Of a stretch of DNA of 64,000 nt, positions 30,595 to 64,000 are shown piece by piece (positions within the stretch are counted from its first letter, which is position 1; each line of letters starts with the position of its first letter). The notes under the pieces are model-generated. The model saw nothing but the letters and a program-made list of their open reading frames with translations. It was not told the DNA's origin and ran no database searches. A program made the translations under genes and the position numbers. Source of the DNA: Octopus sinensis (taxonomy: Eukaryota); assembly GCF_006345805.1 (NCBI RefSeq), contig NC_043000.1:60140001-60204000 (forward strand). The letters are read 5' to 3'.

Positions 30595-30613
30595 TATATA
30601 TATATACATACAT

Positions 30614-30677
<64 letters not shown>

Positions 30678-35044: not shown

Positions 35045-35088
<44 letters not shown>

Positions 35089-35579: not shown

Positions 35580-35617
<38 letters not shown>

Positions 35618-43329: not shown

Positions 43330-43710
43330 TAGGTGCAAGAGTGGCTGTATGGTAAGAAGTTTGCTTCCCACATGGTTCCAGATTCAGTCTTACTGCATGG
43401 CATCTTGGCCTTCTACTATAACCCTGGGCATGCAAAAGCCTTGTGAATGAATTTGGTAGATGGAAACTGAAAGAAGCCTGTCGTGTATAGACAGACAGAC
43501 ATACAGATAGATCTGCATCTGTGCTTGTCCCCTGCCACTGCTAGACAACTGATTTTGGTTGTCCCCTAACTTAGCAGTTTGACAAAAGGTACCGATAGAA
43601 TACGTACCAGGCTTTGAAAAAATAAAAGTACTAGGGATCAATTCAGTCAACTAAAATTCTTCAAGGCAGTACCCCAGCATGACTGCTGTCTAATGAGTGA
43701 ATTAAAAAGA
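43330..43710 (+). mobile_element. SINE family A, full length, diverged
   Basis: ggtgcaagagtggctgtatggtaagaag..gatggaaactgaaagaagcc..ccccagcatgactgc. Confidence 0.85.
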
Positions 43711-43723
43711 AATTTATAACTAA

Positions 43724-44240
43724 CTAGCAGTATCGCCCGGCGTTGCTCGGGTTTGTAAGGGAAATAACTATATAAGCATTTTTAGAGAGTTACTTCCTTT
43801 ATAGATGCCAATTCGGGCTTTCTTAGCCATTTCTGTTTTGGTGTCTTCAAGCCATGAAGTCGTTGTTCTAAAAGAACGCTGGTCTCCTTGACAACGCATT
43901 ACGACGTTGATTTCCTTACACTCCCTTCCTCACAGCTTCACGAGGGATGGAAGAAGGGGGAGAAGCAAACACAGGTGCAGGTGTTTGAGCATGGACGCCA
44001 ACTCCGCCGCCATCGACACACGAAAAATTATGCATTAAAATGGAATAAAAAATGATGTTAAATTATTTTTAAAATTGTAGACTCATCGTAGACGCGCGCT
44101 AATAGCCAGACGGGCTCGATATTAATCATGACTATAAGATACCCGAATTTGGTTAAACTGCACCGCAAAATGTGGGAGGAGTTAGGAATCTAAATCGTAG
44201 GAGACAGACACTCACACAACTACAGTTTTATATATATAGA
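43724..44240 (-). mobile_element. Non-autonomous Helitron, 517 bp, young
   Basis: Minus strand begins TC at 44240 and ends CTAG at 43724, inserted between A and T with no TSD. Hairpin CCCGAGCAACGCCGGG (43736-43751) lies 8 nt before CTAG. CpG-rich compared with flanks. Confidence 0.9.
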
Positions 44241-44277
44241 TTAATTCTCCTACCATTATATGGTGCCACACATAATG

Positions 44278-44477
44278 GCTTCTAACTCGAACACAATGGC
44301 AGCAGTTTTCAACACCATGAACCCAGTACTTGACTGGTACTTTATTTCTTCAACCCCTGGAGGGTTTAAAAGACAAAGTTGACCTCAGAAAGATTTGTAT
44401 TCAGAACATAAAGAGCCAGAAAAAATACTTTAAAGCATTTTTTCCAGTTCTTTAACTATTCTACCAGATCAAGCCTT
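44278..44477 (-). mobile_element. SINE family B copy bounded by a 19-bp target-site duplication
   Basis: tatggtgccacacataatg (44259-44277) and tatggtgccatacataatg (44478-44496) flank ctggtactttatt..caaagttgacctc..ttcagaac. Confidence 0.8.
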
Positions 44478-44544
44478 TATGGTGCCATACATAATGATTT
44501 CCAATAATTAATAATTTATAACAATGTTAGATATGAATATTCTT

Positions 44545-44649
44545 TTCATCCATATCTCTCTCTCTCTCTCTACATATATATATATATATATCTTATAAGT
44601 GCATACACACACATATATATTATATAGCATATTATATATTTATTATATG

Positions 44650-44700
<51 letters not shown>
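44545..44700. repeat. (CT)n/(TA)n compound microsatellite
   Basis: Read directly from the sequence. Confidence 0.93.
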
Positions 44701-44704
<4 letters not shown>

Positions 44705-45273
44705 TTTCCAAAAAGAGAACACAATAGAAAGAACAATTTTTATATTAAAGAAAAAGCATTCCTTCATCCTACATTGGTACTAAATAGTGCAAGGTTGACT
44801 TGAACATAGCTACACACCTTTAATAAGTAATTTGCATGAATTTCTTTATTTCCTTTAGTTATAAGTGTCTATTTCTGAAGAGTATATTTCAAAAGCTATT
44901 TTCTTAAATTTACAGAATTTTCTTTTTGTTTTCAAATTTGAACCAATAAAACCATAACATTAAAAAAATGTTTTCTAAAGATATTTAGAGAGAGAGATAG
45001 AAAGATAGAGAGACAGAGACAGAGAATACTGTTTGGACATTATCTTTCTCTTTCAATTTCTTTCTGAAACTTATGTTTAGCCATATCTGCATCATATACA
45101 TTTGTGTTTTCTTCCTTGCGTACATAAAAATAGATTTATTGGTCATAACGCTGGTTTTTTTCTTTTTAAGTGTAGCATACATTTTATAAGAAATAATCTA
45201 TAAAATATCTAGTATATATTTGTAAATATTAATTCTTGAACAAATGTAATATTAATAAATGTTGTTTTATAGA

Positions 45274-45291
45274 CATACATACATACATACA

Positions 45292-45318
<27 letters not shown>
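45274..45318. repeat. (ACAT)n microsatellite
   Basis: Read directly from the sequence. Confidence 0.95.
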
Positions 45319-45323
<5 letters not shown>

Positions 45324-45888
45324 GTTATTATTTTAACATGCACATTTCTATGCTCACGTGAGTTGGACAGAATTTGTTATCCCTTCATGCTGTCGACCTT
45401 TATCTCTTTCCAAGTAAGATATTTCCTCATAGTAAGGTAAGTTTTCAAGGAAGATTGTGAAAGTGACACTTGTTTACAACTGTCATGCAATATCAAGATG
45501 ACACCAACTCACACACACACACACACACACACATATATAAAATCATAAAATATATAATTAGCAGCTTTATCATTTTAAAATCTACTTTTCCATGCTGCAT
45601 GAATTGGACAGGACCTTTTGAGAGTGTTATATCACCAGATACTCTGCCGGATGCCAATCCTTTTAGTTGTCTCTCAAATATACAGGAATACAATGTATTT
45701 ATTCTAAAACCTTGGATTTATATAAATTTATAATCCATAGTTATTTAATGCTATTGCGCCTGTGATCCATCTAAGTCACTGCTGGTGATATCATCAATTT
45801 AAAAATTTATCCACAGATGATATGAACAGTAGTGACAACTGATTTCAAATTTCAGTGTTTGAATGTTTTGCTTATATATATATATATA

Positions 45889-45939
<51 letters not shown>

Positions 45940-46019
45940 GGGGGGAGAAACAGACAGAGACAGATACATTGTCTGCAATCATCTCTTCTCTACAATTACT
46001 CTCTTCTATTCACATGTTT

Positions 46020-46400
46020 AACTTTTACTTCTTTTGGTCATTAGACTGCAGCCATGCTGGGGTGCTGCCTTGAAGAATTTTTAGTTGAATGAATCAACCC
46101 CAGTTCTTCCATTTTGCTAATCCTGGTATTTGTTCTATCCATTTCTTTTGCTGAACTGCTAAGTTACAGGGAAGTAAACACACCAACACTGGCTGTCAAG
46201 CAGTACTACAAGACAGACACAAACACACATACACACATATACAGCAGGATTCTTTCAGCTTCCATCTACCAAATCCACTCACAAAGCTTTGATCAGTCCA
46301 AGGCTATAGTATAAGACACTTGTTCATGGTGCCACACAGTGGGATTGAACCTGGAACCATGCAGTCAGGAAGCAAGCTTCTTACCACATAGCCACACCTA
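46020..46400 (-). mobile_element. SINE family A, full length, diverged
   Basis: ggtcattagactgcagccatgctgggg..ccatctaccaaatccactcac..cttaccacatagccac. Confidence 0.85.
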
Positions 46401-47149
46401 GAGTAGTGAGGACTTTCCTTGCAGAATACAAGACAACCACAGTGCTGATACTACAATAGAATGCACCTAATTCACTCTGTAAAAAGGTTGGAAAATTAAC
46501 AGAAACAAGAATAGACACTAGTTTTGTCTGTTGTGGCAAAATTTGAACTCATGTTCATAAATTGGTTTCCAGTCAGATATTCAACATCTTACACTCAAAA
46601 TTTCTATTCCAAGTTATATGTATGTGTATACATGAATGGGTTTGTATATGCATTTACTAAGGTAGAGAAGGTGATCCTAGTCGCTGATGTATTTACATAC
46701 ATAGATGTGTGTGCATGTATGTTTCAAATGACAACCTTTGAGTGATTTTTAAATTGAATATATGAATAATTCAATTGCTTTGAATAAATTGAAGGGTTTC
46801 AATGAGAATGTTGTTTAACTAGAGTGGGAAGTTTAGTAGAGAACTATCAGGAAAATTATTCAACTTGAAACAATTTGAATAAAATCAAATTAAATGATAG
46901 TGCAGTAAAGTAAGGGTAAAGGTTAACATTTAAGATAAAATAGACTGTGGAGGGAGAGGATATACATCTATGTCTAAAGGAGTAGTATTAACACTGTTTG
47001 CACATAACTAGCTGTGAACAGCAATGTATGGCTATTGCATTAATACAGCTGAGGTTATTTAATGATGCTACCTATTGCTGCTACTGATGGTGATGGTGAA
47101 GTAAAAGGAAAATGATAGTAGCACTGATAATGATTAGGCAATGACTAAA

Positions 47150-47925
47150 GGTTGATGTGTGACTGATGGTGTTCAACTACTGATGTAAAACTGATGACTG
47201 ATGCATGAGACTGCTATTGATGCACTTAACGATACTAATGCATGTGACTGATACTAATACATGTGACTGATAGTGATGTATGACTGATAATTATGTGATT
47301 GATGTTGACATACAGTTGATGTGACTGATGAAGATATGCAACTAAGGTGGAATGGATGATGTGTGATTGTTGTATGTGACTGATAATAATGTGTGTGACT
47401 GAATGATGTAGGATTACTATTGACAAGTAACTGATACTGATGAGTGGGTAATATTGGTGTGCAACTGTGCTTGGTGACATTTCATCCAGCTTCACATTCT
47501 GGGTTCAAATTCTGTCAAGGTTGATTTTGTCTTTCATCATTTCGAAGTCAATGAAATAAGTACCAGTTGAGCACAAGGGCTGATGTAACTGACTAGTCTC
47601 CCCATCTCCTTCATAATTTTAGGCCTTGTGCCTATAGTAGAACGGATATTAAGAGTAAAAATCCTAATTGTATAAGTGAAAATGGTATAACTAATAATAG
47701 CAATTGACAATCATATGAATAAGATAAGAGTAATAATGATGATGATGTAATTGATAATGATGTGAATGATGGGGATGTGTGAGTGACAGGGATATGTGAG
47801 TGATAGTTATGTGAATGATAATATGATGTGATGTGACTAATAATGATGATTATGAGACTAATAATGATTATTAAAGAGGATTCAACTGATGGTGATTATC
47901 ATGATAGTGATGATGATGATGAAAA
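47150..47925. repeat. Decayed atgtgactgat-type minisatellite interrupted by a family B SINE (~47450-47650, + strand)
   Basis: atgtgactgat recurs at ~18-21 nt spacing on both sides of ctgggttcaaattctgtcaaggttgattttgtctttcatcatttcg. Confidence 0.75.
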
Positions 47926-50900
47926 TTAACTACATTGCTGAAGCTAAAATAATGTATAGATGGATTTGTTAGGGTCTTGCTAGTTGGCAATAATGCTTTG
48001 CATGAAAGGAAACAATGATAGCTCTGCTAAATAAAAGAACAATTGCTAAAGGAAGAATTGTGAATGGTAAAACAACAGTCAATAAAATATCAAGCCTTTT
48101 AGCATAAAACAGCAATAATGCTACAACAATCAACTAAATTGGTAGTTATTCTTCTGCAGAAGAAAAACATCGGCAACTGTCTGGGAATATTACCTAGAAT
48201 TTATTTTAGTTGTTAAGATAGACTAATAGAAAAAATTCAGTTAAAAGGTAGTATATATGATTCTTAATATTACTTGTGCAAATTTAGTTACACTAAACCA
48301 ATCAAAATGTCTTTTTTTTTTTTTTTTTTTTTTTCCCCTTTTTGTAATTTCAACTTCTGCAGTTCTTTCTCACTTAAACAAAGAAACTAGTGCAATTTCA
48401 AGTATCTGTCATAGATTTGTATCAGGAAAGATTTTCACTTAAGTAGATTTAATTAGTCTACTTAGTAATACAGTAGAGAGTAGCAGAACAAGATGAAAAT
48501 ATGATTTCAAAATCTTTATAGACTGCATTCTTTTAAATGTATATATTTTTCATTAATTTAATAGATTTAAAAATGTCTTAATTAAAACTATTCAATGGGT
48601 TGGGGAAAGCCTTATTAAAAATCCTTACCCATGCTAGCATGGAGAAAGGACATTAAACGATGATGATGATGATGAAAACTAATTATGTTTAAAACAATAA
48701 TCTGCTTATGACTATAAGCAGCTATTTTGTTGGTTTGAAAGGGTTAAATTAAATCTTGTCTCTTAATTTTGAAAATTTCAACAATACTAAGAATAAACAG
48801 ATGTAGAAGGAAACCTTTCAATGTTTTCACTTTTATTTTCCTTAGCAGCAAAAGCTGGGTGGTCCTTGAAATTTAGTCATTTCAAAGAATTTTACAAAAG
48901 CCTGCCAGTACTTAAACCAATTTATTCAACTATGACATGCAGTTGGTATCCATTCCCTTCATAGAAAATGAACTAAACAGTTACACCAATCAGTTTGACA
49001 CAAGAAAGTGGATATGTTAACAAAATCTAGTAATAAAAATATATGTTGATAATGGAAATTAGTTACTTTTTTTTTAAGTAAATACACAAATTCTGCTTTC
49101 AATTTAATTGCCATAAAATAGTAACTCAGAGTAAATTAGCACTTTTAAGACACAATTGTCAAATGTTTAAATATTTATATGCAAATATCAGATGTTTGGC
49201 AATTTTCAATTTACAATCATCTAGTTCAATTTCCAAATTTTCAGTAAATTTCCAGTTTAGCAAAATATTGTAGTTAAACAGTAAATAACAGTATAAAAGG
49301 AAATAAGGAAAAGGAATCTATTAAAATCAAAAGAAATTTGTTCAAATACAAGATATTACCAATCTTGATGTTATTTTATTTGCAACTTATTTTCACTGCT
49401 AATTTGAACAAAATTCTGAAAATCCTGTCTAGTGAAAGCATAAAAAAGAAATTACAAACCAATTTCAATAGAAATTCCTAATGTATAGCAAATATAACCA
49501 TTTATAAATATAGAATTTGAATAATTTTTTATAAAATAGAAGAGATATATGACAATTTGGGAAAACCTCATTTTCATTCATAGTGGATGCAAAGAACTTT
49601 CTGAAGCAATATGCAAAGATAGTTAATTCAGTGGGGTTACTTTTCAAGCTTTTGGAATCCCATTACTAAACTAACAATTTCTGACAAGTTCATGAAAACA
49701 AATCTGATACACACTGAAGCTGATTCTGCTTATATGCCACACAGACACCCCAACAAGGTGGTTTTCAAAAGATAAGTATTATTACAGCATAAGAGCAGTA
49801 GCAGAAACTTTAAAGGCATATGAGTGTGTATGAAGTGAGAAGTAATTAATGCAAACAGTTCTTCAATCCCAACTTATTACTCCCTTCTGTTATAACAAAA
49901 TACAAATGCACTAAGAAGGAAGCCTTTTACTTTACTTTACTCAACCTGTTAGAAATAGCAGTCAAATCTCTCCTATGACATCCAAGTGCCTTAAACAAAG
50001 AAATGACATAATAGGAAATGGTAGTCATAGACATCCAATAAAAAGACAGGATGGTCACAGCTGGAATGCCTTTAATCATAAAGTCATGTCAGTCAGAAAT
50101 GACCTGAGGATAAGAACAATAAAAAGAAAAAAAATTAAAGCTGAATACCATAAGGTTTAAGGAAAGGGAAAAAAGAAACAGAATCTCTGATTCCAGATTC
50201 AGTAAAAGAGAACAACTATCATCAGTAAAGTAACATTCCAAACTTATCTGTGGTTATCACTAGACTTACAAGGAACCTAAAAATACCAATAACAAAAACC
50301 TCCAACTAAAAAACATTAACCAAAAATATCCCTAAACAATTACACCATTTGCTGAAGAGAAACCAAGTTTTATACCTAAAAATGGAGCAAGATACAATAT
50401 TATCTCTTATGAGACACAGAAAGCATTTAACATTAAAGAAGAGAAATGGGGCTATTTTTATTCATTTTGTTTTTTTTTAAATATTTGGCTAGTTTTTTTG
50501 CATATTTTTGCTAGTCTTTTTTTTACTGTACATGACACTGTACAATAGCATTCTTTGTTAAACTCAGTTTTTAAAGCCTAGAAATTAAGTTCATTGTTTT
50601 TTGTTTTTTTTACTTTTTTTTTTGGTAAGGATATATTTTCTATGATATATTTTAAATAATTACTAAACAATACTATAATACTATACTACAGAACAGAAGA
50701 GAATAATAAAATAAAAACATAGCTTGGACATATATCTAAGTGTTCACAATATACTTTCAACACTGAGAAAGCAATATTGTTAAATATTAACATCAGTTCC
50801 TAAGCAAAAATTGTGAATTGTTAAAACTATTCAAACACACACACACACACAAACACACGTGTGTGTGTGTATAAGCAGTAACACAGTAAGCATAGTGTTT

Positions 50901-51748
50901 AAAGGTGGAAGAGTGGGGGCAGTTAATAATAGGGTGTTCAGTTGTAGTATACATAGCAGCAGTACAGATAGTGACTGCACCAATAATACTTCCAAGATAT
51001 CTGTATGGTTTATCCATGTGAACCAATATTTCAGAGCAACTGAAATTGGTGGTGGGAATTTGACATATGTGCCCCCTTATTTTAAATGTCAAAAGCATTT
51101 TTAGTGATATAATATGTAGTCAGAGACTGCTGAAAGCCAAAACTATAAAAATGACTATAGCCAATTCTGGCTTCATAAAATAATTCCTTCCCTCCTCTGC
51201 ACACATACATCATACATATAAATGTGAGTGTATGTGTGTGAGTGTGACAAAGCTATATTTCAGAAATTGTGCATGTTTCAAGATCAGGCCGAATTTGAGA
51301 AAAAATTACATGAAATATACATTCCCCTACTTCAATAAGATAATATTTTGAATTATGATAATATAAATGAATAGAAATAGATTCTTTTATCAAAATAATT
51401 TAAATAAATAAAAGCAGAATCTTTTATAAAAAGATAATATAAAATAATTAAAAATGGGTTCTTTAATAAATATCTAAATATCAAAACCTTTAATCATAAT
51501 CACAAAACTAAAGTCTTTTTCTTACACTAAAATTGGAAAGTGTATGTGTAAACATGAGGTATATCAGTAAAGTTATGGAAAGATTTCTTCCTTAATGTAA
51601 AGCATATATAACTGAAATGCCTTCTCCTTATCAGAATAGCAGAATGGTAGTGGATATATAGAAACCTGGGAGAAAAATAGCTAAGAAATATATTGCTGTG
51701 TAAATAATAAAGAGAGAAACTTATATATATGCTATTCAAACTGAAAAG

Positions 51749-51797
<49 letters not shown>

Positions 51798-51944
51798 TTT
51801 GTTGTTTCTTTAACAATTACAACATGAAATAGGAAGGAAGTATACTTGTGTTGCCTGCATGTGCATATGAACACACAAACATACATGTACATATGATGTA
51901 TGTCTGTACATACATACATACACACATATATCTATTTATACATA

Positions 51945-52330
51945 TACTCTTTTACATGTTTCAGTCATTTGACTGCGGCCATGCTGGAGCACCGCCTTTA
52001 GTTGAACAAATTGACCTCAGGACTTATTCTTTGTAAGCATGGTATCTATTCTATCTGTCTCTTTTGCCGAACTGCTAAGTTTCAGGGTCATAAACACACC
52101 AGCACTGGTTGTCAAGCGATGGGGGTGGGGTGGGGACAAACACAGACACACATGAATATATACATATAAATACGATAGGCTTCTTTCAGTTTCCATCTAC
52201 CAAATCCACTCACAAGGCTTTGGTTGGCCCAAGGCTATAGTAGAAGACACTTGCCCAAGTTGCCATGCAATGGGACTGAACCCAGAACCATGTGGTTGGG
52301 AAGCAAGCTTCTTACCACACAGCCAAGCCT
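51945..52330 (-). mobile_element. SINE family A, fairly young full-length copy ~1 kb into the intron after the giant exon
   Basis: cttttacatgtttcagtcatttgactgcggccatgctggagcaccgcc..cttaccacacagcc. Confidence 0.9.
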
Positions 52331-53291
52331 GTGCCTCATATGCACACACACATATATATATATATACATTTATATGTATATATGAGTGGTGTATATACAG
52401 ACACACACATACACACAAACATGTATGTACATATGTCTCTGTATGTATATTCATAGTAGTGTATATACACACACACATACATATATATATATATGCTGTT
52501 AGAGTTGTGACAAATTACTTATACTTACTGATGAAAGGACTCAATACTGTTGACAGTGTCAAATTAATTATATAAAGGGGATGGGGTTTTGCTTCTTGAG
52601 CTTTAGTCAAAAACTCCTTGTGTGTGTGAGTAAAAACGCATACACACACTAGCCCGATACCCACCAAAAATGATAAGGTTATTTGAATACAGATAAAAAA
52701 TTATGAAAATTCAATACATGTAAAAAGAGTAAGCTTGAGTTTGTGACATTAATTTATTCATAAAATTATACTGAGAAAGCTAAGCAGTTGGTCAAAAAGC
52801 AATCAGATGAAAGAGACTGTGGGGCAAAACATAGCTTTCAATGTATGTGTGTACACCTAGTAAGGTGAACTCTATTACCCAATCACTTTTTATCTATCAA
52901 ACACACTATTTTACTCAGTCACACTAGCTAGCAATCTGCCTTAATATATATTTTAGTGTATCTCAATAATCACAATTGTAGAAACAGACAACTGAAATCT
53001 TCATTCAAGAGTCAACTTCTAAAATACAATAATAGAATAAAGATTGCCAATTTCACTTTATCACCAGATTCATTTACTACAAGATCTTACATGTATGTAA
53101 ATGTGAAATTTTTTTATAATAACAAAAGATAAAATAAAAGGTTTCAAATTTACTCTAGAAGTAAATTTACACACATGTGTATGTGTGTAAAGGGAGGTTG
53201 TGCACAACAAGGACAGAAACCATCAGATATTAGTAGTGTGACACTGGTTATAATATAATATTAATAAATGAAAAGGTGGGAAAAATAAATT

Positions 53292-53297
53292 ACTTAC
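53292..53297 (-). promoter_or_regulatory. 5' splice site ending the giant exon (GGG|GTAAGT, phase 0)
   Basis: Perfect donor consensus. Coding-like composition stops abruptly here and AT-rich sequence follows. Confidence 0.85.
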
Positions 53298-56200
53298 CCC
53301 ATAGGTAGATGAATCACTAGCTCTCAATTTCTGATGTGACCCAACTTGGTAGAATTCAGACAAGGTACTCCTATCAGACCAACAAGCTCGAGCAAATTCG
53401 CTGGCATCTAAATAGAAATCCATGGATGACATTAAACCTTCAGGAGAATCCTCGTTTGAAGAGTATCCCTGTCCTTTCAGTTTGATGTTGTTTTTATCTT
53501 TGGTCTGTTTTAAATCATCATAACTTATTTTGGTGATAGAATCCAGTGATTCTGAACTTTCTGATTCAGAATTTTCATAAATAGAAGATCGAATAATGTT
53601 TGCATAAACTGATCGAGACGTGGGTAAATTTCTGTATGTTCTTTTTCCATCAAAATAGAGTTCGTTCTCACTTTTGCTTAAGTCACTTTCAGATTTATTC
53701 TGTGACAATTTCTTCCAAGATTCATTCAATAATGTTGGTGAACCAATAATGCTGAAAATTTCATCACATAAAGAACCAACTTCTCTAGGTGAAGAACCAT
53801 AAATATCTTGCTCTAACATGGGCATATCTTTTTGATTTCCTAATGATGATTCTGTTTCCTCAGATGCATGGTAGGCATCTGAACTGTTTGCAAAATTCAT
53901 TTCTTGTTTCTCTGTATGTTTATTTTTTATTTTATTTCTTTCCATATCTGTACTTAATCCTGGGCTTTTTCCTTGAGGTATATCCATTGGCAGGGACTGA
54001 GAATCAATGAGTTTTCTAGGAGAGTCAATTTCATTTACTACTTCTTTGCTGTGGATTGGTAGTGCATCATCTGAATCATGTTGCATCCTTTTATTTGCAT
54101 TCACTGGTTCACAGTTTAAATATGGTACACACTCTTCAGCATTAGCAGGTAAAATATCATATTCATCTGTAATAGGAACCCAATCCATATCTGAAGGTTG
54201 CGCAATGCCTGAATCTATTAATCGTCCACTATCAGTATCATTTGTGGTTACAATGTCTGAAACAGCCATTGATACATTATCAAACTCATGAAGTGGATGT
54301 TCAAAACCTGAATCAATAAGCGGTTCACATTTCAACTCATCAACAGAAGAATGTGTGCTGGGGTCATCTGTAATAGTATCCAAATCAACAGCTGTTTCAT
54401 ATTCACTAATAGAAGTTGATTCAATCACTGAAGGATGAGGAAGTTGCTCCATGCTATTTTCTTGTAAATCCAATATGGATTCCATCTCTTTGCTTTTAAA
54501 TTTTGTGTTCACTGAACTAAGTGTATCCTGCATAGGAGTGACTTCAGGAAGATCTTGAGATGCACTATTCTTTAGCTTAACTGAAGCAATGCTAACAATG
54601 TTGGAATCACATACAGTTTCATCCATATCAACAAATGGTATGTCATCCACAATTTCTGGTGAATAAGTCTTCTGTTCTGTAATAACTGGTTGAACAGTTT
54701 CAGTCTGCAAAGTTAGCTCAGCTTGTGATTTATGTGTCATCTCAGCCTCAGTTATCTCAGTTTTTCCATAATCCTTTATTTTTGAGTTGGTGTCAAGAGA
54801 AAGAATATTTATTTCAGATGGCTGGCCATCAACAGAATCATAAGATTCTTTACTGCTTGTAATATCTCCCAACACAGTTTTGTGCATTTTTAAATTTTCA
54901 TGAGTGAATTCTTCTTCATTATTTCCAAAGACTTCTTCTTCGAGTACAGGGCTCTGATTAAACAATTCCATTGTGCATTTAGAAATTTCTTCAAAATTAC
55001 TACTTTGTTCTTGCTTTAAAGTCAAGGAATTTTCTTCAAAACTATCACTCTTCATAATCTGTGCTGAGGAATATTTCTCAATAAAACTGTGTTCTCCATC
55101 ACTGTTTGGAGTAACTGGTGTAGATTTCAAAATGTAATCCTGATATTTTTCAGATGGAATACTTGAACCATCATCAAGGATATATCCTCTTCTCCATTTG
55201 CCTTCATGTTTGATCCAAGATTCTTTTATTGGTGAAACTATTTCATCTGTCTTTGGACTTAGGTTTTGCAATGTGTCAGCTTTTGGTATGTTTAATGCTA
55301 AAGAAGAATTAGTTTTTGTAGGGCTAATATTTTCATTAATACTCCCAGGGATTGTACAAAAAGCATCCAATCTTTTAAAACTTGGTGACCTTTCTTTTCT
55401 ATCAATTGAAACCTTTGTAGGAGAGGGTGATTTAATATCCTTGCTTGATACTGATTCTGTTTGCCCACAAAGTTCAAGAATTTTCTGTTTCCTTAGATTG
55501 AGAGTTCCCTGAAGTTGCCGAAGTGTGAAATCCTGATTGGAATTATCATTGGTTTTCTTTACTCCTTCATTCTTGAGAATAACAAAACCTCCATCTTCTA
55601 TTTCCATTTCTTGAGAAATATCATTATTACAAATATTGACATCCAAAGAATCAAATTCATTTTTATATCCATATTTAAGGCTATTAGTATATGCTCTCTG
55701 CACATCTTCATTAAAGTTGAAGTTTGTTTCAAGTAAGTTTTTATCATCTAAAACAGTATTTCCAGACAAACAGTTTTTAGTTTGACTTTTAAAGTTACCA
55801 AGTTTCACATCAGCAGGTCTTTGTTGGATATTCTCAGCTAGGGAATCAGTATGAAAACAGGGTTCCAATTGATGGGAATGCAAATAAGAATCTTTGTTAA
55901 TCCTTTTTTCATTACATCCTGATATTAGTTGTTGATCAGATTTACCAAAATCAGTTTCCTCAGATTTTGTTCTTAACTGCAAATGCTCAAGGCTTGGAGA
56001 TATTTCCTCTGATAAAATATCTGGAGCATCATCTTCACTTATTTGTGTTTGTAACTGCCTCAGAATACTTTCATGTAAATTTCCATGAATTCGTGAGGAG
56101 GTATTGCTAGATTCAATACTGGGAGACTGGTCAAGCAGTTCTTCAACATCCTCTCCAATACTAGATTCAGCTATATTTTCTAGTGTGATTGATGTACTAA

Positions 56201-59200
56201 GATTTTCATATTGACTGTCTGTTTCTGCTTCAATTGAGAACCATAAATTTTGTGTTTCATTACTATCCAGCGTCACTTCAGCAAGATCTTCTCCAGCATC
56301 CACAATTGGACGTTCACCGATTATATCATCATTTGTAAAATGAGTTGATTCTTCATTATAATTCCTCTCATCGGTCACAACATAATCCTGTTCTTCTACT
56401 ATAATCTCATCTTCACCATCTGGACTCCCAGACACTTGTAAAGTACTGTCTTCAATTTCTATAAGGACACCTTCAGTTTCACCTTCTGCAATATCACTAA
56501 CATGTTTACAGGTACCGCTTAGCTCATCCACATTGCTGATGTCATTCAGTTGAGAGGTTTCCTGGTCAAATATTTCCTGTACATCACTGAGAGGTGTGAC
56601 AGCACCATCACTGATATCTTTGAAGCTACTGCTGTCATTACTGCAGGGGCTGAGCATCTGACCAGCAAGGAATCCCATTTCAGATGGTAAGAATGGGCCT
56701 GTCATCTGCCTGGTTGCATTAGAATTCAGTTGTTGTTGTTGTTGTTCCATAAACAGTGTGGCAGTACTCCTTGATAAATCACCTTTTTCACACATGACAT
56801 CTCTGTCGTAGGTCTGGGTTCTTGTCTGAGATGTATGAAGATCTCCTAGTTGTAGTTTAGAGGACTGGATCCCTGGTTGGTCTGCCATTTCCTGAAGGCT
56901 GGAATTGGTAACATCAGCTTTTATTGTTGCTGCAAGTATTGTTGTTGTTGTTGTCACAGCAACTTCACCAAAACTTATCTGTTGCTTAAACCGAGCTTCT
57001 TCACCAACATTTACTTGTGTGAATGATGTTGGTCTGTCTCTTTCTCTTTGCAACAGTTTGTTGACAGGGCAGTCGACAGCTTCCTCATCGCTTCTCTCAG
57101 CTCCTGCGAGTTCTCCTTCAGTATCGTCTCCCCTCAGAACTGTAGTAGTTTTGGTAGCTGTCACATCTTTACTTGTTCTGTCTGTAGCAGAAACTGGGTT
57201 ACAACCACCACTACCACTGTTTTCATTCCTCGAAATATTGTGGTGGGCTATTTGGGGCGGGGTGAACTCTACTACTGGCATCCCATGCCCTGCCACTCTG
57301 TAAATGTCAGCTGACTTAAATACAACCACTGATGCTTTCTCTTCTAAGTTTTCACTCTCACCCACTGCTTTTTCCTCCCCATCTTCTTCCGCCTGCTTTT
57401 GATTTTGTCCCTCTTCAAATTCAAAGCTATACACACATTTACTATCATTAATACTATGAAGCTGTGGACTAGACTGAGCACCCCTCCCATCATCTGTTGA
57501 TAAATTTTTAAAACTATTCTCAGTTCCAGTAGATTGGTGTGGGGGATGATAATGGTGTTGAGGGGGATGGTGGGGATATTGCTGATGGGGGCAGGGCTGT
57601 CCATAATGTTTCTGTGGCTGCTGATAACCACAGCTGGAAAGATTACAGTCATAACTAGCTTCATAGTCAAAAGTTTTATCAGAATAAGCATCAGATTTAA
57701 TTACACCATGGTCTGATAATTTTAGTTTTACTCTGTTTTCCTCTGTGTCTTCTTTTCTCTCCATTTCCTCTTTTTCTTCTTTTTCACTACACTCATCCTC
57801 ACTGGTGTTAGTCTGGTAGCTGCTGGTAACTTCTCTGCAAGCATGGACAGCTGACTGTGTGCACTGGAAGCCAGTGTGCTTGTCGGTGTAGTTGTCACTA
57901 GAAGAGGTCACAAGAGATCCATTATACACATAGTCCTCATGTAAACTGATGTCCAGGGCAGAAGCTGAAGAACTAGTTTGATAACTTTCCGAAGCATCAA
58001 CATCAGAGAGGTGGTTGGGGTTTGAAACATTGTCTAAATCTCCGACATGTACACTGGGCCCAGATATGCTTTCATCAGAAAGGGCCTCGGTTATAATCAT
58101 GTAGTCATCATAAGCAAAATTTTCAGAAATATTTGGTTTTGTTGATGAGCTATCTTTGTCAACTTTATCTTCATTTTCAGGTGCATCATCTAGTTCTTTA
58201 TAATGTAGTTCCGAATTTTCTACCTCATTAACAGAAAGTGTATTCCTAGTTTTATCCAGCTGTAACCGATTACTGTCATAGGTTGCTTTTCCCTGAAAGT
58301 TTTTGCCAGCTGTCTGACTGACCACATTATGAGACTGAGCCTCTAACAACTTAGACTTTTTAATACCAGATGAAGCTTTAGAAGAAGCAGTAGGCAAATT
58401 AGAAGTCACTTTATGGTCACTAAAACCTCGACTTGTTTTTGCTACAAGTTTCTTTTTTGATAATGGTTCAATAGCTTCATTTGATTTTAATGATGTAGTT
58501 TTTTTACCTGTAGCTGGTATACTCTTTTTAATCTGAGATCTATCAATATTAGTGGTTGGTTTGCCCTCCTGGTTGCTACCTAGCCCCACACCTGTTCTCC
58601 GCTCAGTAACTGCAGAGGTGGTAGGGCGGACATTACTTAATTTTTTATTGTCCAGTTTATCAGCTGCAGTTGCAGCAGTAGGAATTGAACTGCTGCTGCT
58701 GCCACTAATTCTGCTAGCCTTCAATAAAGACATACCACCACTGTATTTTTCCTTTTGGTGAACCAAACCTCCATTGCTAATGCTTTGAGTGGGAGTTAAT
58801 TTTTTATTGTGCGAAATACCTTTTTGTTGAAGTGTACTGTCAGAAGTGGTGACACTATTATTGCGAGATTTAACTGACAAATTTTCACAACTTGCTTGTA
58901 ACACATTTTTTTTCTTCTTTGCTAAATTTTCACAACTTTTTCCAAATGAGTTTTGAATTTTGTTTGACAAATTCTCGGAACTGACTGTCTTTAAACTTTC
59001 TTTGTTTTGAATTCTGCTACCTAATCTAGTTGTGCTGTTAACTGAAAGATCAGATGCTGAATCAGCAACTTTCTTTTGCCTCAGTGACAGACCACTACTT
59101 TTTGTAGCTGTTGTATTAGATCTGCCAGTAGGAGGAATACTCGATTTATTGGAATTATTTCTTAAAGAACCTGTGCTCACAGCTCTTTGTAAGTTTTCAG

Positions 59201-61178
59201 TGTTAACTCGTGACGTTAAACGTGAATGTGCAGGAGATGACTTGGATGGGTGAGACAAAGCAGAATTACTAGTTCGAGAGACAGTTGTGGATGAGGTGGT
59301 ACGGCTTAGCATGGACGGTTTTTTCTGTAGTTTTGTTTCTGCTTTAGACACAGCTAAACGTGAACAGGAACTCGTAAGAATTTTACTAGTTTTCCCAAGC
59401 CCACCTTTAGTGGAACTTGGAAGACAAATAGACGATTTAACCGATGAAGTGGATAACTGGGAACAAAAAGAAGAATGGCTAGCATGGCTGGACTCTGAAT
59501 CTGACCGAAGACGGAATTTATCATTTAATTCATTAACTACTTTCACTTCATCAATAGCCGATTCACTATCTTCTGGTAACTCTTCAGACAGAACTGCAGA
59601 AATATGTTTATCAACTGAAATTAATTCATTACAATTTTTAGAACTTATATCACTGGTTGTTTGATGTTTAGTTTTACTTAATGCTGTGTTACGATGTATC
59701 TTAGAACTACTAACAGATTTACCCACGTTGATATTTTTTAAATTTGATGTATTTTTATCACCTTGTTTCTTAACATTCGTATCCCCATTAACAAGAGAAG
59801 ATTTTTTACCTGTGCATTTAGACGGAAGTCTACTACTGTCAGCACTTGTCTGTTGGGTGGTTTGTTTGTTAAGGGAGATCCTGGTGGTCTGATCAATCAA
59901 AGTAGATTTTCCACGAGGAAGCTGGCTGGATTTCACAGAATGTTTAGTCCCTGTACTCATGTTTGTCTTTTGTTTCTGTTGAACAGGTATTTTGCAAGGA
60001 GATGAACTTTTTTTCATTTCAACACGATTACCGGCGGATACACCACCGTAGTCCGAAGATAAAATAATTTCACCAGAACCTTCACCGGAGACTCCGTCAC
60101 ACTTTCGGTAGACTGTTGAGTTATGAAATCCGTCAGCAGGTTGGTTGTTAATAATTTTGGTAGAATCCATGTTAGGGCCTGCATTGAAATTTATCCGCGT
60201 TTCCGAACCCGACTCGATATCTCCACAAACATCATTTGAAGAAATAACAACATTATCAGACTTATCACTACCGCACAGCAGTTGTTGTAACGACTCTGCT
60301 TCTCTCGCTACTGACTGTGCACTTGGGAAATTTGCAGTTATACACCTGTAATTGGTCGATTTGTTTGAAAAGTTCTGTCGTGTTTCACGTTTGTCAGAAT
60401 AGTATTTGTATTGACAACACAAACGATCACTGTTTCCATACAGAGAATGTTTAGTTTGAGGAGGTAAATACAGAGGTATACTGACCGGTTTCGTTTTCAG
60501 TTCCAACAGCGCAAGTTCCGCTGTTCCAGTGTCTGCGATAGGCTTTTCCCCGCCGTCTCCGTCACCGCTACTACCACTGTTGCTGCTGGCTATACCAACG
60601 TAGTTGGAATAGGTTGGTAAAAGTGACCGTATTGCCGTGGATGTGGGGTGGTCGTGTACTGCTGCTTGCTCTATCAATAAGACAGAGCTACTACTACTAC
60701 TACGGTTGCCGCTATACTTCCTATGTAACAGACTATCAGCATGGATAAACAACGGTAGCGAACCCTCTTTCAGAACGGTTTCGTTACAAACAACTGGTAT
60801 ATGATCTGTGTGAGTTGTTGATGAAGTTGTTGTTGTTGTTGATGATGTTGTTGCCGCCGCATTAGACAGTTCATTTCCGCGATAGCCTAAAGTACAAACA
60901 CCGCAGTCGATCGCTTGGTTAGTGCTTACTCGACAGGTTTCCTTATCAGAGTCAAAAGTATCACTACTTTTCCACGATCTTTCTCTCTTGCTTACCTTAA
61001 ATGCAAGTGGTCCTTGCAACGCAGGTACTGTCAGTAGTTGTAATAATAACGTTACTTTTGTTAGTACCGGAGTTGGTGTAGTAATGATGATTAGTTGTAC
61101 AGCAGTCACAGCAGTAAGTAGCTTCGATACATGGTGGCCCCTTTGTTGAAGAGTAGGAAGAAAGCAGCCCCAAATGAT
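53298..61178 (-). CDS. Giant coding exon (~2,600 codons) for a Ser/Thr-rich, probably disordered region of an unidentified protein
   Basis: Stop-free frame from 61178 to 53223, ending at a canonical donor at 53297. First in-frame ATG at 60170. No folded domain recognised. Basic N-terminal and acidic C-terminal halves. Confidence 0.88.
60990..60995 (-). promoter_or_regulatory. Candidate alternative 5' splice site (AAG|GTAAGC), phase 0 in the giant ORF frame
   Basis: Near-perfect donor consensus, 7698 nt (2566 codons) upstream of the distal donor. Confidence 0.45.
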
Positions 61179-63968
61179 TTACTGTGTTCTCGGTGCCACA
61201 GTAATTACGACTGCTAACTTGCTGGTTGCAACCAGTATTTGCTTCATTAAAGCATAAATTACTACGATGATAATAAAGATTACGAGTATTTTGAGCGAGA
61301 AGAAAATGTGAATTGTTCAACTTTTCTGTGAACGAATTTTTCTCTTCCTGGGTAAACAGAGATAGTTGTTTATTTCCAAATAATCCATCGGACCGTACAT
61401 GGCCTTCTCGTTGAACACTAGTGACAGTTTCTCTATCAAATACGTTTTTCTTTTTATTAGTTCTCCCTTTATTGATTTTATCCTTTCCACCGTTGCTCCG
61501 TCTACCTTTTCTTTTCTTCACTTCTTTCGTGTGTTCGGCAACTAAGCAAGTGTCGGAAACAAGTGTAGAGGTGAGAGCAACATTATCAGAAGTAAGAGGA
61601 AAACATGAGGGAGCCAAGGTTGTTTGGGTAGCGCTTCCTAATGAAGTTGCTATAACTGACGTTGGGCTGTAAGAAAAGCTGTTGCTAGATATTATCCCGC
61701 TATCTTTTCTAACGCATGTTTCAATGGTTGGGGTAGGGTGAAAAGGAATCTCAGGAGGAAAAACTATAGATGGGAAAGAAGATAAAAGTGATGTCGGGGT
61801 AGATTCTCCCCCTGCTGCTGATAAAGATGATAAATATGATAAGGGAGTCGACTTCGTCGGTATTAAGCTTCTGGTAGTAACAACTACGTCGCACTTATTA
61901 CTGATGACATTATTTTTGTTGGTGGTGGTGGTGTTATCGTCGTCGATATATTCTGTGTGAGAAAATCCAGGAAGGGGATCGAGCCATTTCGGGTTTAACT
62001 GCTTTCCCAGTTGTTCATTAACACGAGCAGCTGACAACCGACCACCTATGTCGTTATCGATACTAAAGGGGAAAACTGTGTGGTCAGAAATCGGCCACGG
62101 ATATCTATGACACTTTCGTTCTTTTGTCGGCAGAACATCATGTTGTTCTGCTTGGCTGCGGATACATGTCAAAGATGAAAAATGAACTCATTATAAGCAT
62201 TTGTAATGTCTACAAATGACTTGGTGTTTATGTAGTGTCGAGTGAGTGGACTATCATTGCCACTGGTGATGATGTCATAACTATCACTTTTGCTTTTGTT
62301 ACCGGATGATTGATATTTATTCCAAGTCGAACTACTGCCTAATGTATCTCTCAAATACTGCGAATTGTTAAATTGAAAATCGAAGTTAGTGTTACTATCC
62401 AGGAGTAATAACATGTGATTGCGAATATAAAGGAGAATTTTCCTCACCGACAGCCTTAAAAGACTTGTCAAAAACAGAACCAGAAAGATTTGTGTTATCA
62501 GATTGATTATTATTATTAAATTATAGTAACAAACAATTAATCCGTATTGTAGAAATGTAGACAATTCCGTTTCCTTGTACCTGAGTACCAAGAATGTAGT
62601 TCGCTTTCACTTCTCCCTCTTTCTTTGCCGTGATTCGCTCGCCTTCTCCGCCGGTAAGTGCGCTTGTCGCGTGGCAAGTTCCTGGAATGCCTTTCGTAAC
62701 GTGCTGATCCCTATGCAATGCTGTTTCTGTGGCATTATCATCGTCACAGCTGTCTGGCAAGTTGTCAGTGTATTGTGATGATTGGCAGACAGTATCCTTC
62801 AAACGAGTTGTTTTTAACTGATGACAGCAGCAGTTGCTACAGAGAAAATGTGGAGAAGTGACGCAATTATTATTAAAATTATCGATGACGATTTCCTTAG
62901 AAAAAATATTTTTACTATCTACATTCCTCGTGCTTGCCACTAAACGTTGCTCATTATTTTGGGTGTGGTCCGGAGTCAGTGACACCCCTTCCTCTGACGG
63001 TCCGCAATTTATACAACAATCATTTTGTCTGAGATCAATAGTATTGGTCGACACATTCTGATCATATTTATTTACTTGACTGGAAACAGCTCCTGTTTTT
63101 GTTAAATATTCTGGTTTTACACTTTCCTTAAATCTAGATAGGGAGGTTAATAATGTATGCTGCGGTGATTAGCATTGTGTTTTATTAGATAATTCTTCTT
63201 GGAACGTAATATCACGTAAGCTTTTATCTAGTGTTTGGCTAGAAAAACATGTGGTTTGGCATGAAAGTTCATAACTTTGATCTTCTAACCGGTTATACAA
63301 ACAATCTTTACTTTGATCTGTTCCTTTTGTGTTACCACCGTCTGCGACATTATTTGTTTTCGGTTGACACGGATTAGCGGCTATGACATAAGTATCCAAA
63401 GTTTCACTTGGTCTGTCGAAAGTAACTGCATTAGTACTTTTACTGTTGGGAAAATTTTCTGTGGAAACAGACGGAGAGTAATTTATTTCACTAACTGTGG
63501 TCATCCGAGAGGAGAAATCTGATGGAATTGTTATAGCAGTATTAGAGATACCATGTATTAATTTTGGGTATATTACCGATGCTGAATTTGTGCAGCCAGT
63601 GGTCTCTTCGGCAGTTCCAACAGCTGTGATATAGTTAATAATATAATTGTGCCTGTTGTCATGGCTTTGGGTTAGTCTGTTCTTACAGTGACCACTTCCC
63701 TGCTGGGAAACTACGACAGTAGTAACATCTTTCTGTGGAGAGACTGTCGCTGTTGCCTTGTAAAAATCAGCTGCTGCTATCGGTGAAATAAATTCTGATA
63801 CAACATTTAACCCGCTGGTCGATAATTTTTCTTTGTATAAGCATAGTGGTGCAATTCGGTTTAGACGTTCTGAATGAATAGTGTTGTGTATGATACTATT
63901 ACCCCCACTGGCCGGTAAAGCAACTTGACGTATCGGAGATGACACTATTTCGGAACATTTCCGGTATT
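60997..63968 (-). pseudogene. Interrupted coding-like 5' extension of the giant exon
   Basis: One near-continuous reading of ~990 codons with TAA at 63169-63171 and 62521-62523 and 1-nt frame switches near 62400, 62180 and 61000. Confidence 0.6.
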
Positions 63969-63992
63969 CTAAAGTAAAAACAGTAACTAATT
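63969..63992 (-). promoter_or_regulatory. Candidate 3' splice site (ttactgtttttactttag|AATAC)
   Basis: Pyrimidine tract plus TAG at the point where coding-like sequence begins. Phase 1 relative to the upstream open frame. At the window edge, so context is limited. Confidence 0.5.
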
Positions 63993-64000
63993 TTTTTAGA

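What the first reader, a model, noticed from the sequence alone, without database searches (positions are those of the whole stretch)
53298..61178. Giant ~7.9-kb uninterrupted coding exon of an unidentified gene
About 2,600 stop-free codons with no transposon motifs end at a perfect donor. Exons of this size encoding disordered, EB-binding regions are established in giant ankyrins and in MAP1B/futsch-type proteins. This may be a cephalopod giant neuronal cytoskeletal isoform, but no flanking domain exon in the window supports a name.
Basis: partly seen in the sequence, partly recalled or inferred. Interest (0 to 1): 0.7.

Follow-up and report, generated by a model that had tools for sequence, protein, structure and literature searches.

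The report
Giant first exon of octopus Asef-type RhoGEF
The long open reading frame is real and is the giant first coding exon of an already annotated Octopus sinensis gene for an Asef/collybistin-type Rho GTPase activator; it encodes a roughly 2,300-residue, mostly disordered N-terminal arm that long forms of this gene carry in many animals, so it is not an ankyrin or MAP1B-like protein.

Summary
On the minus strand a 2,651-codon stop-free frame runs 61178->53226 and meets a GGG|GTAAGT donor after base 53298. Shuffled windows give at most 172 codons. The window is Octopus sinensis. The frame is 100% identical to RefSeq LOC115210255, whose CDS starts at ATG 60170 and runs 2,291 codons to that donor.

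The rest of the protein lies beyond a >53-kb intron. It is an SH3-DH-PH module whose best solved relatives are ARHGEF4/Asef (E=4e-156) and ARHGEF9/collybistin (5e-151). So the ankyrin/MAP1B reading is wrong, while 'cephalopod' and 'disordered' are right.

The frame is under selection: all 8 indels against a 93%-identical relative are multiples of three. The start codon and donor are conserved in a relative with only 42-45% protein identity.

Long N-terminal extensions on this GEF are predicted across molluscs, a nemertean, amphioxus and vertebrates. In the nemertean Lineus the first coding exon is likewise 6,048 nt.

The basic, Ser-rich first 600 residues carry 5 SxIP motifs against 0.65 expected. 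This is a hint of EB1 binding, not a demonstration.

One thing is unexplained: the 3.8 kb upstream of the ATG looks like coding sequence in a mosaic of frames but is not conserved as coding. Overall this is ordinary and already annotated.

The parts
53298..60170 (-). Annotated and conserved coding part of the giant exon. It has 2,291 codons, from the ATG (60170-60168) to the last exon base 53298, and encodes the N-terminal arm of LOC115210255.
   Evidence: P0001 (XP_036357918.1) maps 100% from 60170 to 53298. All 8 indels against L002 are multiples of 3, and differing codons are 157 synonymous to 193 non-synonymous. The distant relative P0006 starts with the same MDST.
60168..60170 (-). Start codon ATG in the context AACATGG (A at -3, G at +4).
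   Evidence: It is the first ATG of the open frame. ATGGATTCTACC is conserved in L002 and L001. L001 has an in-frame TAG four codons upstream.
53292..53297 (-). 5' splice donor GTAAGT immediately after exon base 53298. The junction is in phase 0.
   Evidence: Read directly. GGG|GTAAGTAA is identical in L002 and in the distant genomic locus L001. L003 continues after GGG with K-S-A-Y-A, which resembles the next octopus exon (KGIYAV), so it appears to be a spliced transcript. Both RefSeq isoform groups diverge exactly after residue G2291.
58371..60170 (-). Basic, Ser/Thr-rich segment (residues 1-600, net charge about +52) with five SxIP-type motifs and the highly conserved islands 128-169, 191-377 and 389-450.
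   Evidence: Purifying selection is strongest here (70 synonymous to 60 non-synonymous codon differences for 57000-60170).
53298..58370 (-). Acidic segment (residues 601-2291) made of fast-evolving linkers with conserved islands at 943-995, 1144-1371, 1518-1596, 1818-1858 and 2112-2291. It includes the mollusc-wide W[IV]..G.W[KR][KR] island (residue 1652) and the DIPFVD island (residue 1843).
   Evidence: Residues ~1390-1890 evolve near-neutrally (23 synonymous to 69 non-synonymous) but keep the frame. The few AF2 helices fall on the islands.
60171..61178 (-). Continuation of the same open frame upstream of the ATG: 336 codons with no stop and no ATG. It is not conserved as coding, so it is 5'UTR, intron or a decayed extension.
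   Evidence: Against L002 there are two 1-bp indels (60387, 60321), two point-mutation stops, and 10 synonymous to 35 non-synonymous codon differences. No RefSeq isoform includes it.
61000..64000 (-). Upstream coding-like mosaic: 62187->61000 (396 codons, frame 1), 62523->62188 (112, frame 2), 63168->62524 (215, frame 1) and 63999->63172 (276, frame 1, runs off the window). Its status is unexplained.
   Evidence: Each piece has zero stops in one frame against 11-39 in each of the other two, and CDS-like codon usage in that frame only. It has no homologues and no Pfam domains. The O. bimaculoides model P0005 reads through three of the O. sinensis breaks.
1..53297 (-). Part of the first intron after the giant exon (>53 kb). 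It holds no other exon of the gene.
   Evidence: No residue of P0001/P0003 beyond 2291, and neither alternative N-terminal exon of the short isoforms, maps here. The O. bimaculoides gene spans ~780 kb.

Best explanation
The stretch is the giant first coding exon of the Octopus sinensis gene LOC115210255, a Dbl-family Rho-GTPase exchange factor of the Asef/collybistin group (ARHGEF4, ARHGEF9 and SPATA13 in vertebrates). Translation starts at ATG 60170 inside the exon. The exon is spliced at the donor after 53298, across an intron of more than 53 kb, to small exons. Those exons encode a linker and then the catalytic SH3-DH-PH module (shown by mapping and by domain and PDB searches). The exon encodes a 2,291-residue N-terminal arm with no recognisable domain. 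The arm is predicted to be mostly disordered, and its sequence pattern is conserved short islands separated by freely evolving spacers (shown). Inferred mechanism: the arm acts as a long flexible scaffold that decides where and when the C-terminal Cdc42/Rac exchange module works. Its basic, Ser-rich first 600 residues, with clustered SxIP motifs, are a candidate phospho-regulated microtubule/EB1-binding region. The acidic remainder carries docking islands, two of which are shared with other molluscs. Short isoforms that start from an alternative first exon downstream (seen in O. vulgaris and Argonauta) would lack the arm. If so, promoter choice switches the GEF between a tethered and a free form (inferred from protein models only). 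A giant first coding exon for a long N-terminal extension is an old architecture of this gene, not a cephalopod invention.
For: Identity and structure: 100% match of 60170->53298 to XP_036357918.1. The domain order is SH3 2684-2733, RhoGEF 2775-2952, PH 2980-3088. The best PDB relatives are ARHGEF4 2pz1 at 3.9e-156 and ARHGEF9 4mt6 at 5.2e-151, with the next family (P-Rex) at 6e-68. Coding status: 8 of 8 indels are multiples of 3 and there is third-position excess. Differing codons are 157 synonymous to 193 non-synonymous, against 10 to 35 upstream of the ATG. The ATG context, an upstream stop in L001 and the donor GGG|GTAAGTAA are conserved, and a spliced-looking transcript contig uses the homologous donor. 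Disorder and islands: no Pfam hits; AF2 mean pLDDT about 30 with no residue at or above 70, and helices only at islands; island map. Old architecture: 380 proteins of 1,750-5,600 aa carry this module, including molluscs of 2,200-5,400 aa, Lineus at 3,337 aa, amphioxus, and vertebrate 'ARHGEF4' at 1,750-2,400 aa. The first coding exon of Lineus is 6,048 nt. Two collinear micro-islands are shared only among molluscs. Short isoforms with their own 19-residue N-terminus join at residue 2329. SxIP: 5 observed against 0.65 expected in residues 1-600, with 0 of 2000 shuffles reaching 5, and 4 against 0.8 in P0006. An SxIP-bearing RhoGEF is a precedent (PMC9473612).
Against: No transcript or protein data for O. 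sinensis could be examined, so use of the exon rests on RefSeq models, conservation and one relative's contig. The AF2 runs used three-sequence alignments, so low confidence is weak evidence for disorder. Apart from two short motifs, the arm cannot be aligned to non-cephalopod extensions. Homology of the arm beyond molluscs is therefore inferred from position and architecture only. The SxIP enrichment is weak or absent in most other taxa (81 against 57 in total). Only two of the octopus motifs are strictly kept in the distant relative. The short isoforms could be annotation splits rather than real promoter use. GTPase specificity was not tested.
Confidence: 0.9

Rival explanations
1. The exon is really longer than annotated (at least 10.7 kb). 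On this reading the coding-like mosaic from 64000 down to 60171 belongs to the same reading frame. The O. sinensis assembly would carry a few indel and base errors, and the true start lies upstream of the window or at a non-AUG codon.
For: Every upstream segment has 0 stops in exactly one frame against 11-39 in each of the others, and CDS-like codon usage in that frame. The O. bimaculoides model P0005 reads straight through three of the breaks. One is a T-run (61001-60999), one a GG at about 62402 and one a TAA/TCA difference at 62523-62521. Small homopolymer indels are a typical assembly error (general knowledge).
Against: None of the RefSeq isoforms (3,168-3,594 aa) is long enough to include the upstream ORFs, and the O. 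sinensis and O. bimaculoides models mapped start at the 60170 ATG. The distant relative starts at the same MDST with a stop four codons upstream and has nothing similar in its upstream 10 kb. In L002 the stretch 60321-60455 has two point-mutation stops and two 1-bp indels, and substitutions look neutral. There is only 1 Met in about 1,335 codons. The upstream ORFs match no protein anywhere.
Confidence: 0.12
2. The upstream mosaic is the relic of a lineage-specific 5' extension of the exon, or of a separate upstream open reading frame. It was coding recently in the O. sinensis/O. bimaculoides lineage and is now decaying as intron, 5'UTR or intergenic DNA. The functional exon would be 60170->53298 plus a short leader.
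For: It has a frame-specific lack of stops and coding-like codon usage. It also has different disruptions in each species: O. sinensis has 3 frame breaks and stops, L002 has 2 stops and 2 indels, and P0005 skips 62198-61264. Its syn:nonsyn ratio is neutral. An AG lies 9 nt before the ATG (TTTCAATGCAG|G), and an AG lies similarly close in L001. These are possible acceptors.
Against: A relic should gain stops as fast as it loses methionines, so the near absence of in-frame ATG is not explained. No ancestor or relative with an intact version was found. Only 60171-60843 could be compared with a second species at the DNA level.
Confidence: 0.6
3. This is the first reader's idea: the exon is a giant insert of a neuronal cytoskeletal protein of the giant-ankyrin or MAP1B/futsch kind.
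For: Its size, disorder and the SxIP enrichment in a basic Ser-rich segment resemble such inserts in a general way.
Against: The exon contains the start codon, and the annotated protein continues into SH3-DH-PH. There is no ankyrin, ZU5, UPA, death or MAP1 domain in the exon, in the window or in any isoform. No homologue with those domains was found.
Confidence: 0.01

Closest known systems
ARHGEF4 (Asef), including the long predicted vertebrate isoforms of 1,750-2,400 aa
   Same: It has the same C-terminal SH3-DH-PH module (54-57% identity to vertebrate ARHGEF4; PDB 2pz1 at E=3.9e-156). A long N-terminal extension precedes that module. The alignment to Asef extends about 13 residues N-terminal of the SH3, further than it does to collybistin.
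   Different: The octopus arm (2,291 residues from this exon, about 2,680 before the SH3) is longer than in vertebrates. It shares no alignable sequence with vertebrate extensions. The core APC-binding region was not detected. Octopus probably has a single gene co-orthologous to ARHGEF4, ARHGEF9 and SPATA13 (inference).
ARHGEF9 (collybistin)
   Same: The SH3-DH-PH module is nearly as similar as to Asef (4mt6 at E=5.2e-151). O. vulgaris annotators named the short isoforms 'ARHGEF9-like'.
   Different: The collybistin chains matched in the PDB are 402-485 aa, and collybistin is not known to carry a giant N-terminal arm (my knowledge, not tested here). Gephyrin-related function was not tested.
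Long Asef-type GEFs of other lophotrochozoans (for example Mizuhopecten LOC110445775 at 5,373 aa, Haliotis LOC124110386 at 5,176 aa, Mactra 'ARHGEF4' at 5,064 aa, Lineus LOC135495173 at 3,337 aa)
   Same: The module is 58-64% identical. The N-terminal arm is giant and low-complexity. Two short islands occur in the same order in molluscs. In Lineus the first coding exon is 6,048 nt starting at the ATG.
   Different: Outside the two islands the arms cannot be aligned. The exon structure of the mollusc genes could not be read because the genes are over 100 kb.
Drosophila RhoGEF2 (an SxIP-bearing, EB1-dependent plus-end-tracking RhoGEF)
   Same: It is a Dbl-family GEF with an SxIP motif set among phosphorylatable serines (PMC9473612). 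The octopus arm has five such motifs in a basic Ser-rich segment.
   Different: It belongs to a different GEF subfamily (PDZ-RGS-DH-PH, RhoA-specific). The resemblance is a functional analogy only, and EB1 binding of the octopus protein is untested.
Giant exons of giant ankyrins and MAP1B/futsch
   Same: All are multi-kilobase single exons encoding disordered regions of proteins tied to the cytoskeleton.
   Different: There is no sequence, domain or positional relation. Those are internal inserts or MAP bodies, whereas this is the start-codon-containing first coding exon of a RhoGEF.

Membership tests
Dbl-family RhoGEF, Asef/collybistin subgroup (ARHGEF4/ARHGEF9/SPATA13) | A DH (RhoGEF) domain immediately followed by a PH domain | tested here: met
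   PF00621 at 2775-2952 (E=7.6e-48) and PF22697/PF00169 at 2980-3088 in P0001. These are encoded outside the window.
Dbl-family RhoGEF, Asef/collybistin subgroup (ARHGEF4/ARHGEF9/SPATA13) | An SH3 domain directly N-terminal to the DH domain (order SH3-DH-PH) | tested here: met
   SH3 at 2684-2733 precedes the DH domain. A single alignment covers SH3-DH-PH of 2pz1 and 4mt6.
Dbl-family RhoGEF, Asef/collybistin subgroup (ARHGEF4/ARHGEF9/SPATA13) | Closer to ARHGEF4/9 than to any other Dbl subfamily | tested here: met
   ARHGEF4 scores 524 bits and ARHGEF9 507 bits, against 233 bits for the next family, P-Rex2. Named hits of comparable total length (1,753-5,577 aa, the search's length window) are ARHGEF4.
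Dbl-family RhoGEF, Asef/collybistin subgroup (ARHGEF4/ARHGEF9/SPATA13) | This window's exon belongs to the same transcript as the SH3-DH-PH exons | tested here: inconclusive
   RefSeq models in two species join them, and the donor is conserved. A relative's contig appears spliced at the donor. No O. sinensis RNA data could be examined.
Asef proper (ARHGEF4/SPATA13) | An APC-binding region (ABR) just N-terminal to the SH3 that relieves autoinhibition | tested here: inconclusive
   The alignment to 3nmz_D starts at chain residue 27, so the flank next to the SH3 aligns but the core ABR does not.
Asef proper (ARHGEF4/SPATA13) | Exchange activity on Cdc42/Rac | not testable with these tools
   This needs a biochemical GEF assay.
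SxIP-type EB1-binding +TIP | [ST]x[IL]P motif(s) in a basic, Ser/Pro-rich, acid-poor disordered context | tested here: met
   Residues 1-600 hold 5 motifs against 0.65 expected, and the net charge is about +52. SSQLPR and S[RK]LPSK are kept in P0006.
SxIP-type EB1-binding +TIP | Direct binding to the EB homology domain and plus-end tracking | not testable with these tools
   This needs a pull-down and live imaging.
Giant ankyrin / MAP1B-futsch giant exon | Flanking ankyrin-repeat/ZU5/UPA/death domains, or MAP1 heavy/light-chain homology | tested here: not met
   There are no such Pfam hits in the exon, in the upstream ORFs or in any full-length isoform. The exon holds the start codon.

The most novel reading that the evidence does not exclude
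The basic, Ser-rich first ~600 residues encoded by this exon could be a phospho-regulated EB1/microtubule plus-end-tracking module. It would place an Asef-type Cdc42/Rac exchange factor directly on growing microtubule ends without APC. That would be a cephalopod-elaborated way of coupling microtubule growth to actin remodelling in large neurons. Separately, the 3.8-kb coding-like but Met-free mosaic upstream could be a still-translated extension that starts upstream or at a non-AUG codon and is hidden by assembly errors.
Probability: 0.15. Interest if true: 0.5.

Novelty: already known. Interest (0 to 1): 0.25.

Why it matters
It settles what the flagged stretch is: an annotated gene whose family is clear. 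That removes a speculative 'giant neuronal cytoskeletal isoform' from the candidate list. Two modest points remain of use. First, long Asef/ARHGEF4 isoforms with 1,300-4,700-residue N-terminal arms are predicted from molluscs to vertebrates, yet the searchable literature says essentially nothing about them. Second, the octopus exon gives a clean map of conserved islands and an SxIP cluster that make the arm's function testable. The upstream coding-like mosaic is a caution for annotation and assembly quality at this locus.

Tried and rejected
- Pfam on the exon and the three upstream ORFs gave nothing.
- A search for downstream exons, and for the short-isoform first exons, in 1-53297 found none. 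One exact 6-mer hit at 42508 was chance.
- Homologues of the upstream 396-aa ORF: none in 5.8 billion proteins. There is no remnant upstream in L001, no internal duplication, no copy elsewhere in the window and no match to any homologue's arm.
- An exhaustive HMMER profile of exon residues 1140-2291 found only cephalopod-like hits.
- Whole-half profiles and pairwise BLAST against 117 long homologues were indistinguishable from reversed controls. Only motif-level tests worked.
- I tried to fetch orthologous genomic DNA. Five look-ups returned no DNA because the gene exceeds 100 kb: O. bimaculoides 780 kb, Sinanodonta 215 kb, Rissa 217 kb and Liolophura 101 kb. Others failed because the isoform is not on record or the protein is too long.
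- An intron between 60486 and 60346, or use of the donor-like TTTAAG|GTAAGC at 60996, could not rescue the upstream frames. These were considered by hand and rejected because the phases do not fit and one L002 indel lies outside.
- A long scanned 5'UTR was rejected as the explanation for the upstream mosaic because it holds 47 out-of-frame ATGs.
- Rfam and tRNA scans of the window found nothing.
- A literature search for ERZ21867824 found nothing, so the species of L001 is unknown.
Full report
**1. The observation**

The long open frame exists, but on the minus strand. It is stop-free from 61178 down to 53226, which is 2,651 codons. One hundred shuffles of the window give a longest open run of 127 codons on average and 172 at most. 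The longest run in the other 53 kb is 208 codons. At the 3' end the minus strand reads TATGGG|GTAAGTAAT, with the last exon base at 53298. The exon is not built of tandem repeats and carries no Pfam domain.

**2. Identity**

A search of the translated frame returned Octopus sinensis LOC115210255 isoform X6 (XP_036357918.1, 3,187 aa) at 100% identity. It also returned O. bimaculoides LOC106874706 at 95%, an unnamed Logan contig at 90% and an ENA contig at 42%. Mapping shows that the annotated CDS begins at ATG 60170 and runs uninterrupted to 53298, which is 2,291 codons.

The remaining ~900-1,300 residues of the isoforms do not map anywhere in 1-53297. The following intron is therefore longer than 53 kb. 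In O. bimaculoides the gene spans about 780 kb.

The tail of the protein is SH3 (2684-2733), RhoGEF/DH (2775-2952) and PH (2980-3088). Its best solved relatives are ARHGEF4/Asef (2pz1, E=3.9e-156) and ARHGEF9/collybistin (4mt6, 5.2e-151). The next family, P-Rex, is far behind at 6e-68. The gene is therefore an Asef/collybistin-type Dbl GEF. There are no ankyrin, ZU5, UPA, death-domain or MAP1 features.

**3. Evidence that it is a functional coding exon with these boundaries**

- Against L002 (genomic, 92.6% identical DNA, running past the donor into the intron), all eight indels between 60170 and 53298 are multiples of three. Third positions change two to three times more often than first and second positions over most of the exon.
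- Differing codons are 157 synonymous to 193 non-synonymous overall. The ratio is 70:60 in the N-terminal 1,000 residues and 23:69 (near neutral, but frame-preserving) for residues ~1390-1890.
- The distant relative (L001/P0006, 42-45% identical protein) starts with the same MDST. It has an in-frame TAG four codons upstream, the same A(-3)/G(+4) start context, and the identical donor GGG|GTAAGTAA.
- A further contig, L003, is 76% identical in DNA to L001. After the homologous GGG it continues not with GTAAGT but with AAG AGT GCA TAT GCC (K-S-A-Y-A). This resembles the start of the next octopus exon (KGIYAV). It looks like a spliced transcript using the same donor.
- I could not examine O. sinensis RNA.

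**4. What the exon encodes**

The product is 15% Ser, with 62-72% polar, charged, Gly or Pro residues (S, T, N, Q, G, P, E, K, D) in every 100-residue window. It is basic in residues 1-600 (net about +52) and acidic thereafter. AlphaFold2 on three-species alignments gave mean pLDDT of 30 and 29.5 for the two halves, with no residue at or above 70. The N-terminal half had essentially no secondary structure. The C-terminal half had a few helices and one hairpin. With such shallow alignments this is only weak support for disorder.

Comparison with P0006 shows conserved islands (at least 60% identity over 40 residues) at 128-169, 191-377, 389-450, 943-995, 1144-1371, 1518-1596, 1818-1858 and 2112-2291. 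Stretches below 25% identity separate them. This is the usual pattern of docking motifs in disordered linkers.

**5. How widespread it is**

The exhaustive HMMER search with the C-terminal half of the exon found only the two O. bimaculoides models and the L003 fragment among 1.84 billion representatives. Profiles and BLAST against long homologues were no better than reversed controls.

A search with the SH3-DH-PH module, restricted to proteins of similar total length, gave a different picture. It found 380 proteins, including:
- molluscs of 1,800-5,400 aa at 60-64% identity
- Lineus at 3,337 aa
- horseshoe crab and amphioxus
- vertebrate 'rho guanine nucleotide exchange factor 4' isoforms of 1,750-2,400 aa at 54-57% identity

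Two short islands of the octopus arm recur in the same order, and only in molluscs. W[IV]x3-5GxW[KRQ][KR] occurs in 10 of 119 arms, in none of the reversed sequences and in 0.05 per shuffled set. [DES]IP[FY][IV]D follows it 80-220 residues later. These patterns were partly derived from the same sequences, so the counts are indicative.

In Lineus longissimus, the one orthologue whose DNA could be fetched, the first coding exon starts at the ATG and is 6,048 nt long. A 1,932-nt exon and then small module exons follow. A giant first coding exon for the arm is therefore an old feature of the gene.

**6. Isoforms**

The RefSeq isoforms found in the two Octopus species are 3,168-3,594 aa, and those mapped or aligned contain the exon. 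O. vulgaris and Argonauta hians models of about 1,230-1,270 aa have their own 19-residue N-terminus (MGTSNQGK...) and join the long form at residue 2329. This suggests an alternative first exon downstream of the giant one. That exon is not in this window. Whether it reflects a real promoter or an annotation split is untested.

**7. The EB-binding idea**

[ST]x[IL]P occurs five times in residues 1-600 against 0.65 expected, and 0 of 2,000 shuffles reached five. It occurs once in the rest against 1.8 expected. P0006 has four against 0.8 (p about 0.007). SSQLPR and S[RK]LPSK are conserved amid poorly conserved flanks. Other taxa show only a weak overall excess (81 against 57).

SxIP motifs set among phosphorylatable serines mediate EB1-dependent plus-end tracking of Drosophila RhoGEF2 (PMC9473612). 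This makes a microtubule-end-targeting role for the basic segment plausible but unproven.

**8. The unexplained upstream stretch**

The same frame stays open 336 codons above the ATG, to 61178. Further up, the minus strand reads as a mosaic:
- 62187->61000 (396 codons, frame 1)
- 62523->62188 (112 codons, frame 2)
- 63168->62524 (215 codons, frame 1)
- 63999->63172 (276 codons, frame 1, leaving the window)

Each piece has zero stops in one frame against 11-39 in each of the other two, and CDS-like codon usage only in that frame. An older O. bimaculoides model (P0005) reads through three of the O. sinensis breaks. It implies one fewer T in the run 61001-60999, one fewer G near 62402, and TCA instead of TAA at 62523-62521.

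Several results argue against a longer CDS:
- No RefSeq isoform includes it.
- The distant relative has nothing similar.
- L002 has two point-mutation stops and two 1-bp indels in 60321-60455, with a neutral 10:35 syn:nonsyn ratio.
- The frames contain one Met in about 1,335 codons.
- There are 47 out-of-frame ATGs, which makes a scanned 5'UTR unlikely.
- No protein anywhere resembles these ORFs.

The upstream ORFs were searched as separate pieces and were never read through a stop. I favour a recently decayed, lineage-specific extension or ORF (about 0.6) over a mis-assembled longer exon (about 0.12). Neither explains the lack of methionine.

**9. Verdict**

The feature is real, large and under selection, but it is already annotated and belongs to a well-known enzyme family. 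The arm's function is unknown in any animal, which leaves a modest open question. The SxIP cluster and the island map make that question testable.

Noticed in passing
window 60171-64000 (minus strand): This 3.8 kb is coding-like sequence in a mosaic of frames, with 0 stops in one frame per segment and CDS-like codon usage. It has only 1 Met in about 1,335 codons and no homologues. Three of its breaks are absent from an O. bimaculoides model.
   Followed up: partly
window 60991-60998 (minus strand): The upstream frame-1 ORF ends exactly at TTTAAG|GTAAGC, a consensus-looking splice donor. With one fewer T, as in O. bimaculoides P0005, it would sit in phase 0 of the main frame.
   Followed up: partly
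window 54500-56000 (minus strand; residues ~1390-1890): Inside the CDS this 1.5-kb stretch evolves at a near-neutral syn:nonsyn ratio (23:69) with no third-position excess. Its indels (21 and 12 nt) still keep the frame. It appears to be a spacer where length or frame matters but sequence does not.
   Followed up: partly
window ~57530-57620 (minus strand; residues ~850-880): There is a His/Pro/Gln-rich patch (QQYPHHPPQHHYHPPHQ) whose HHPP.HHYH core is invariant in the distant relative. It could be a metal-binding or low-complexity interaction motif.
   Followed up: no
window 58875-59010 (minus strand; residues ~388-432): The motif S(S/C)ENL(S/A/T) occurs three times within 45 residues (VSSENLS, KSCENLA, ASCENLS), and all three are conserved in the distant relative.
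   Followed up: no
window 1371-1829 (+) and 6920-7525 (-): Two ORFs in the big intron look like retroelement fragments. One has a weak RVT_1 hit (E=0.004, below the cut-off). The other resembles, by eye, the C-terminal part of a LINE reverse transcriptase and has no significant Pfam hit.
   Followed up: partly
window 51527-52575: Microsatellite-rich DNA ((CA)n and (TA)n type, read as HTHTH/IYIYIY in ORF translations) lies just downstream of the exon, inside the intron.
   Followed up: no
L003:1-2503: This spliced-looking contig (Logan SRR25114244) carries the homologous exon in three different frames (238, 325 and 301 codons). The breaks are either assembly errors or real frameshifts in that species.
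   Followed up: no
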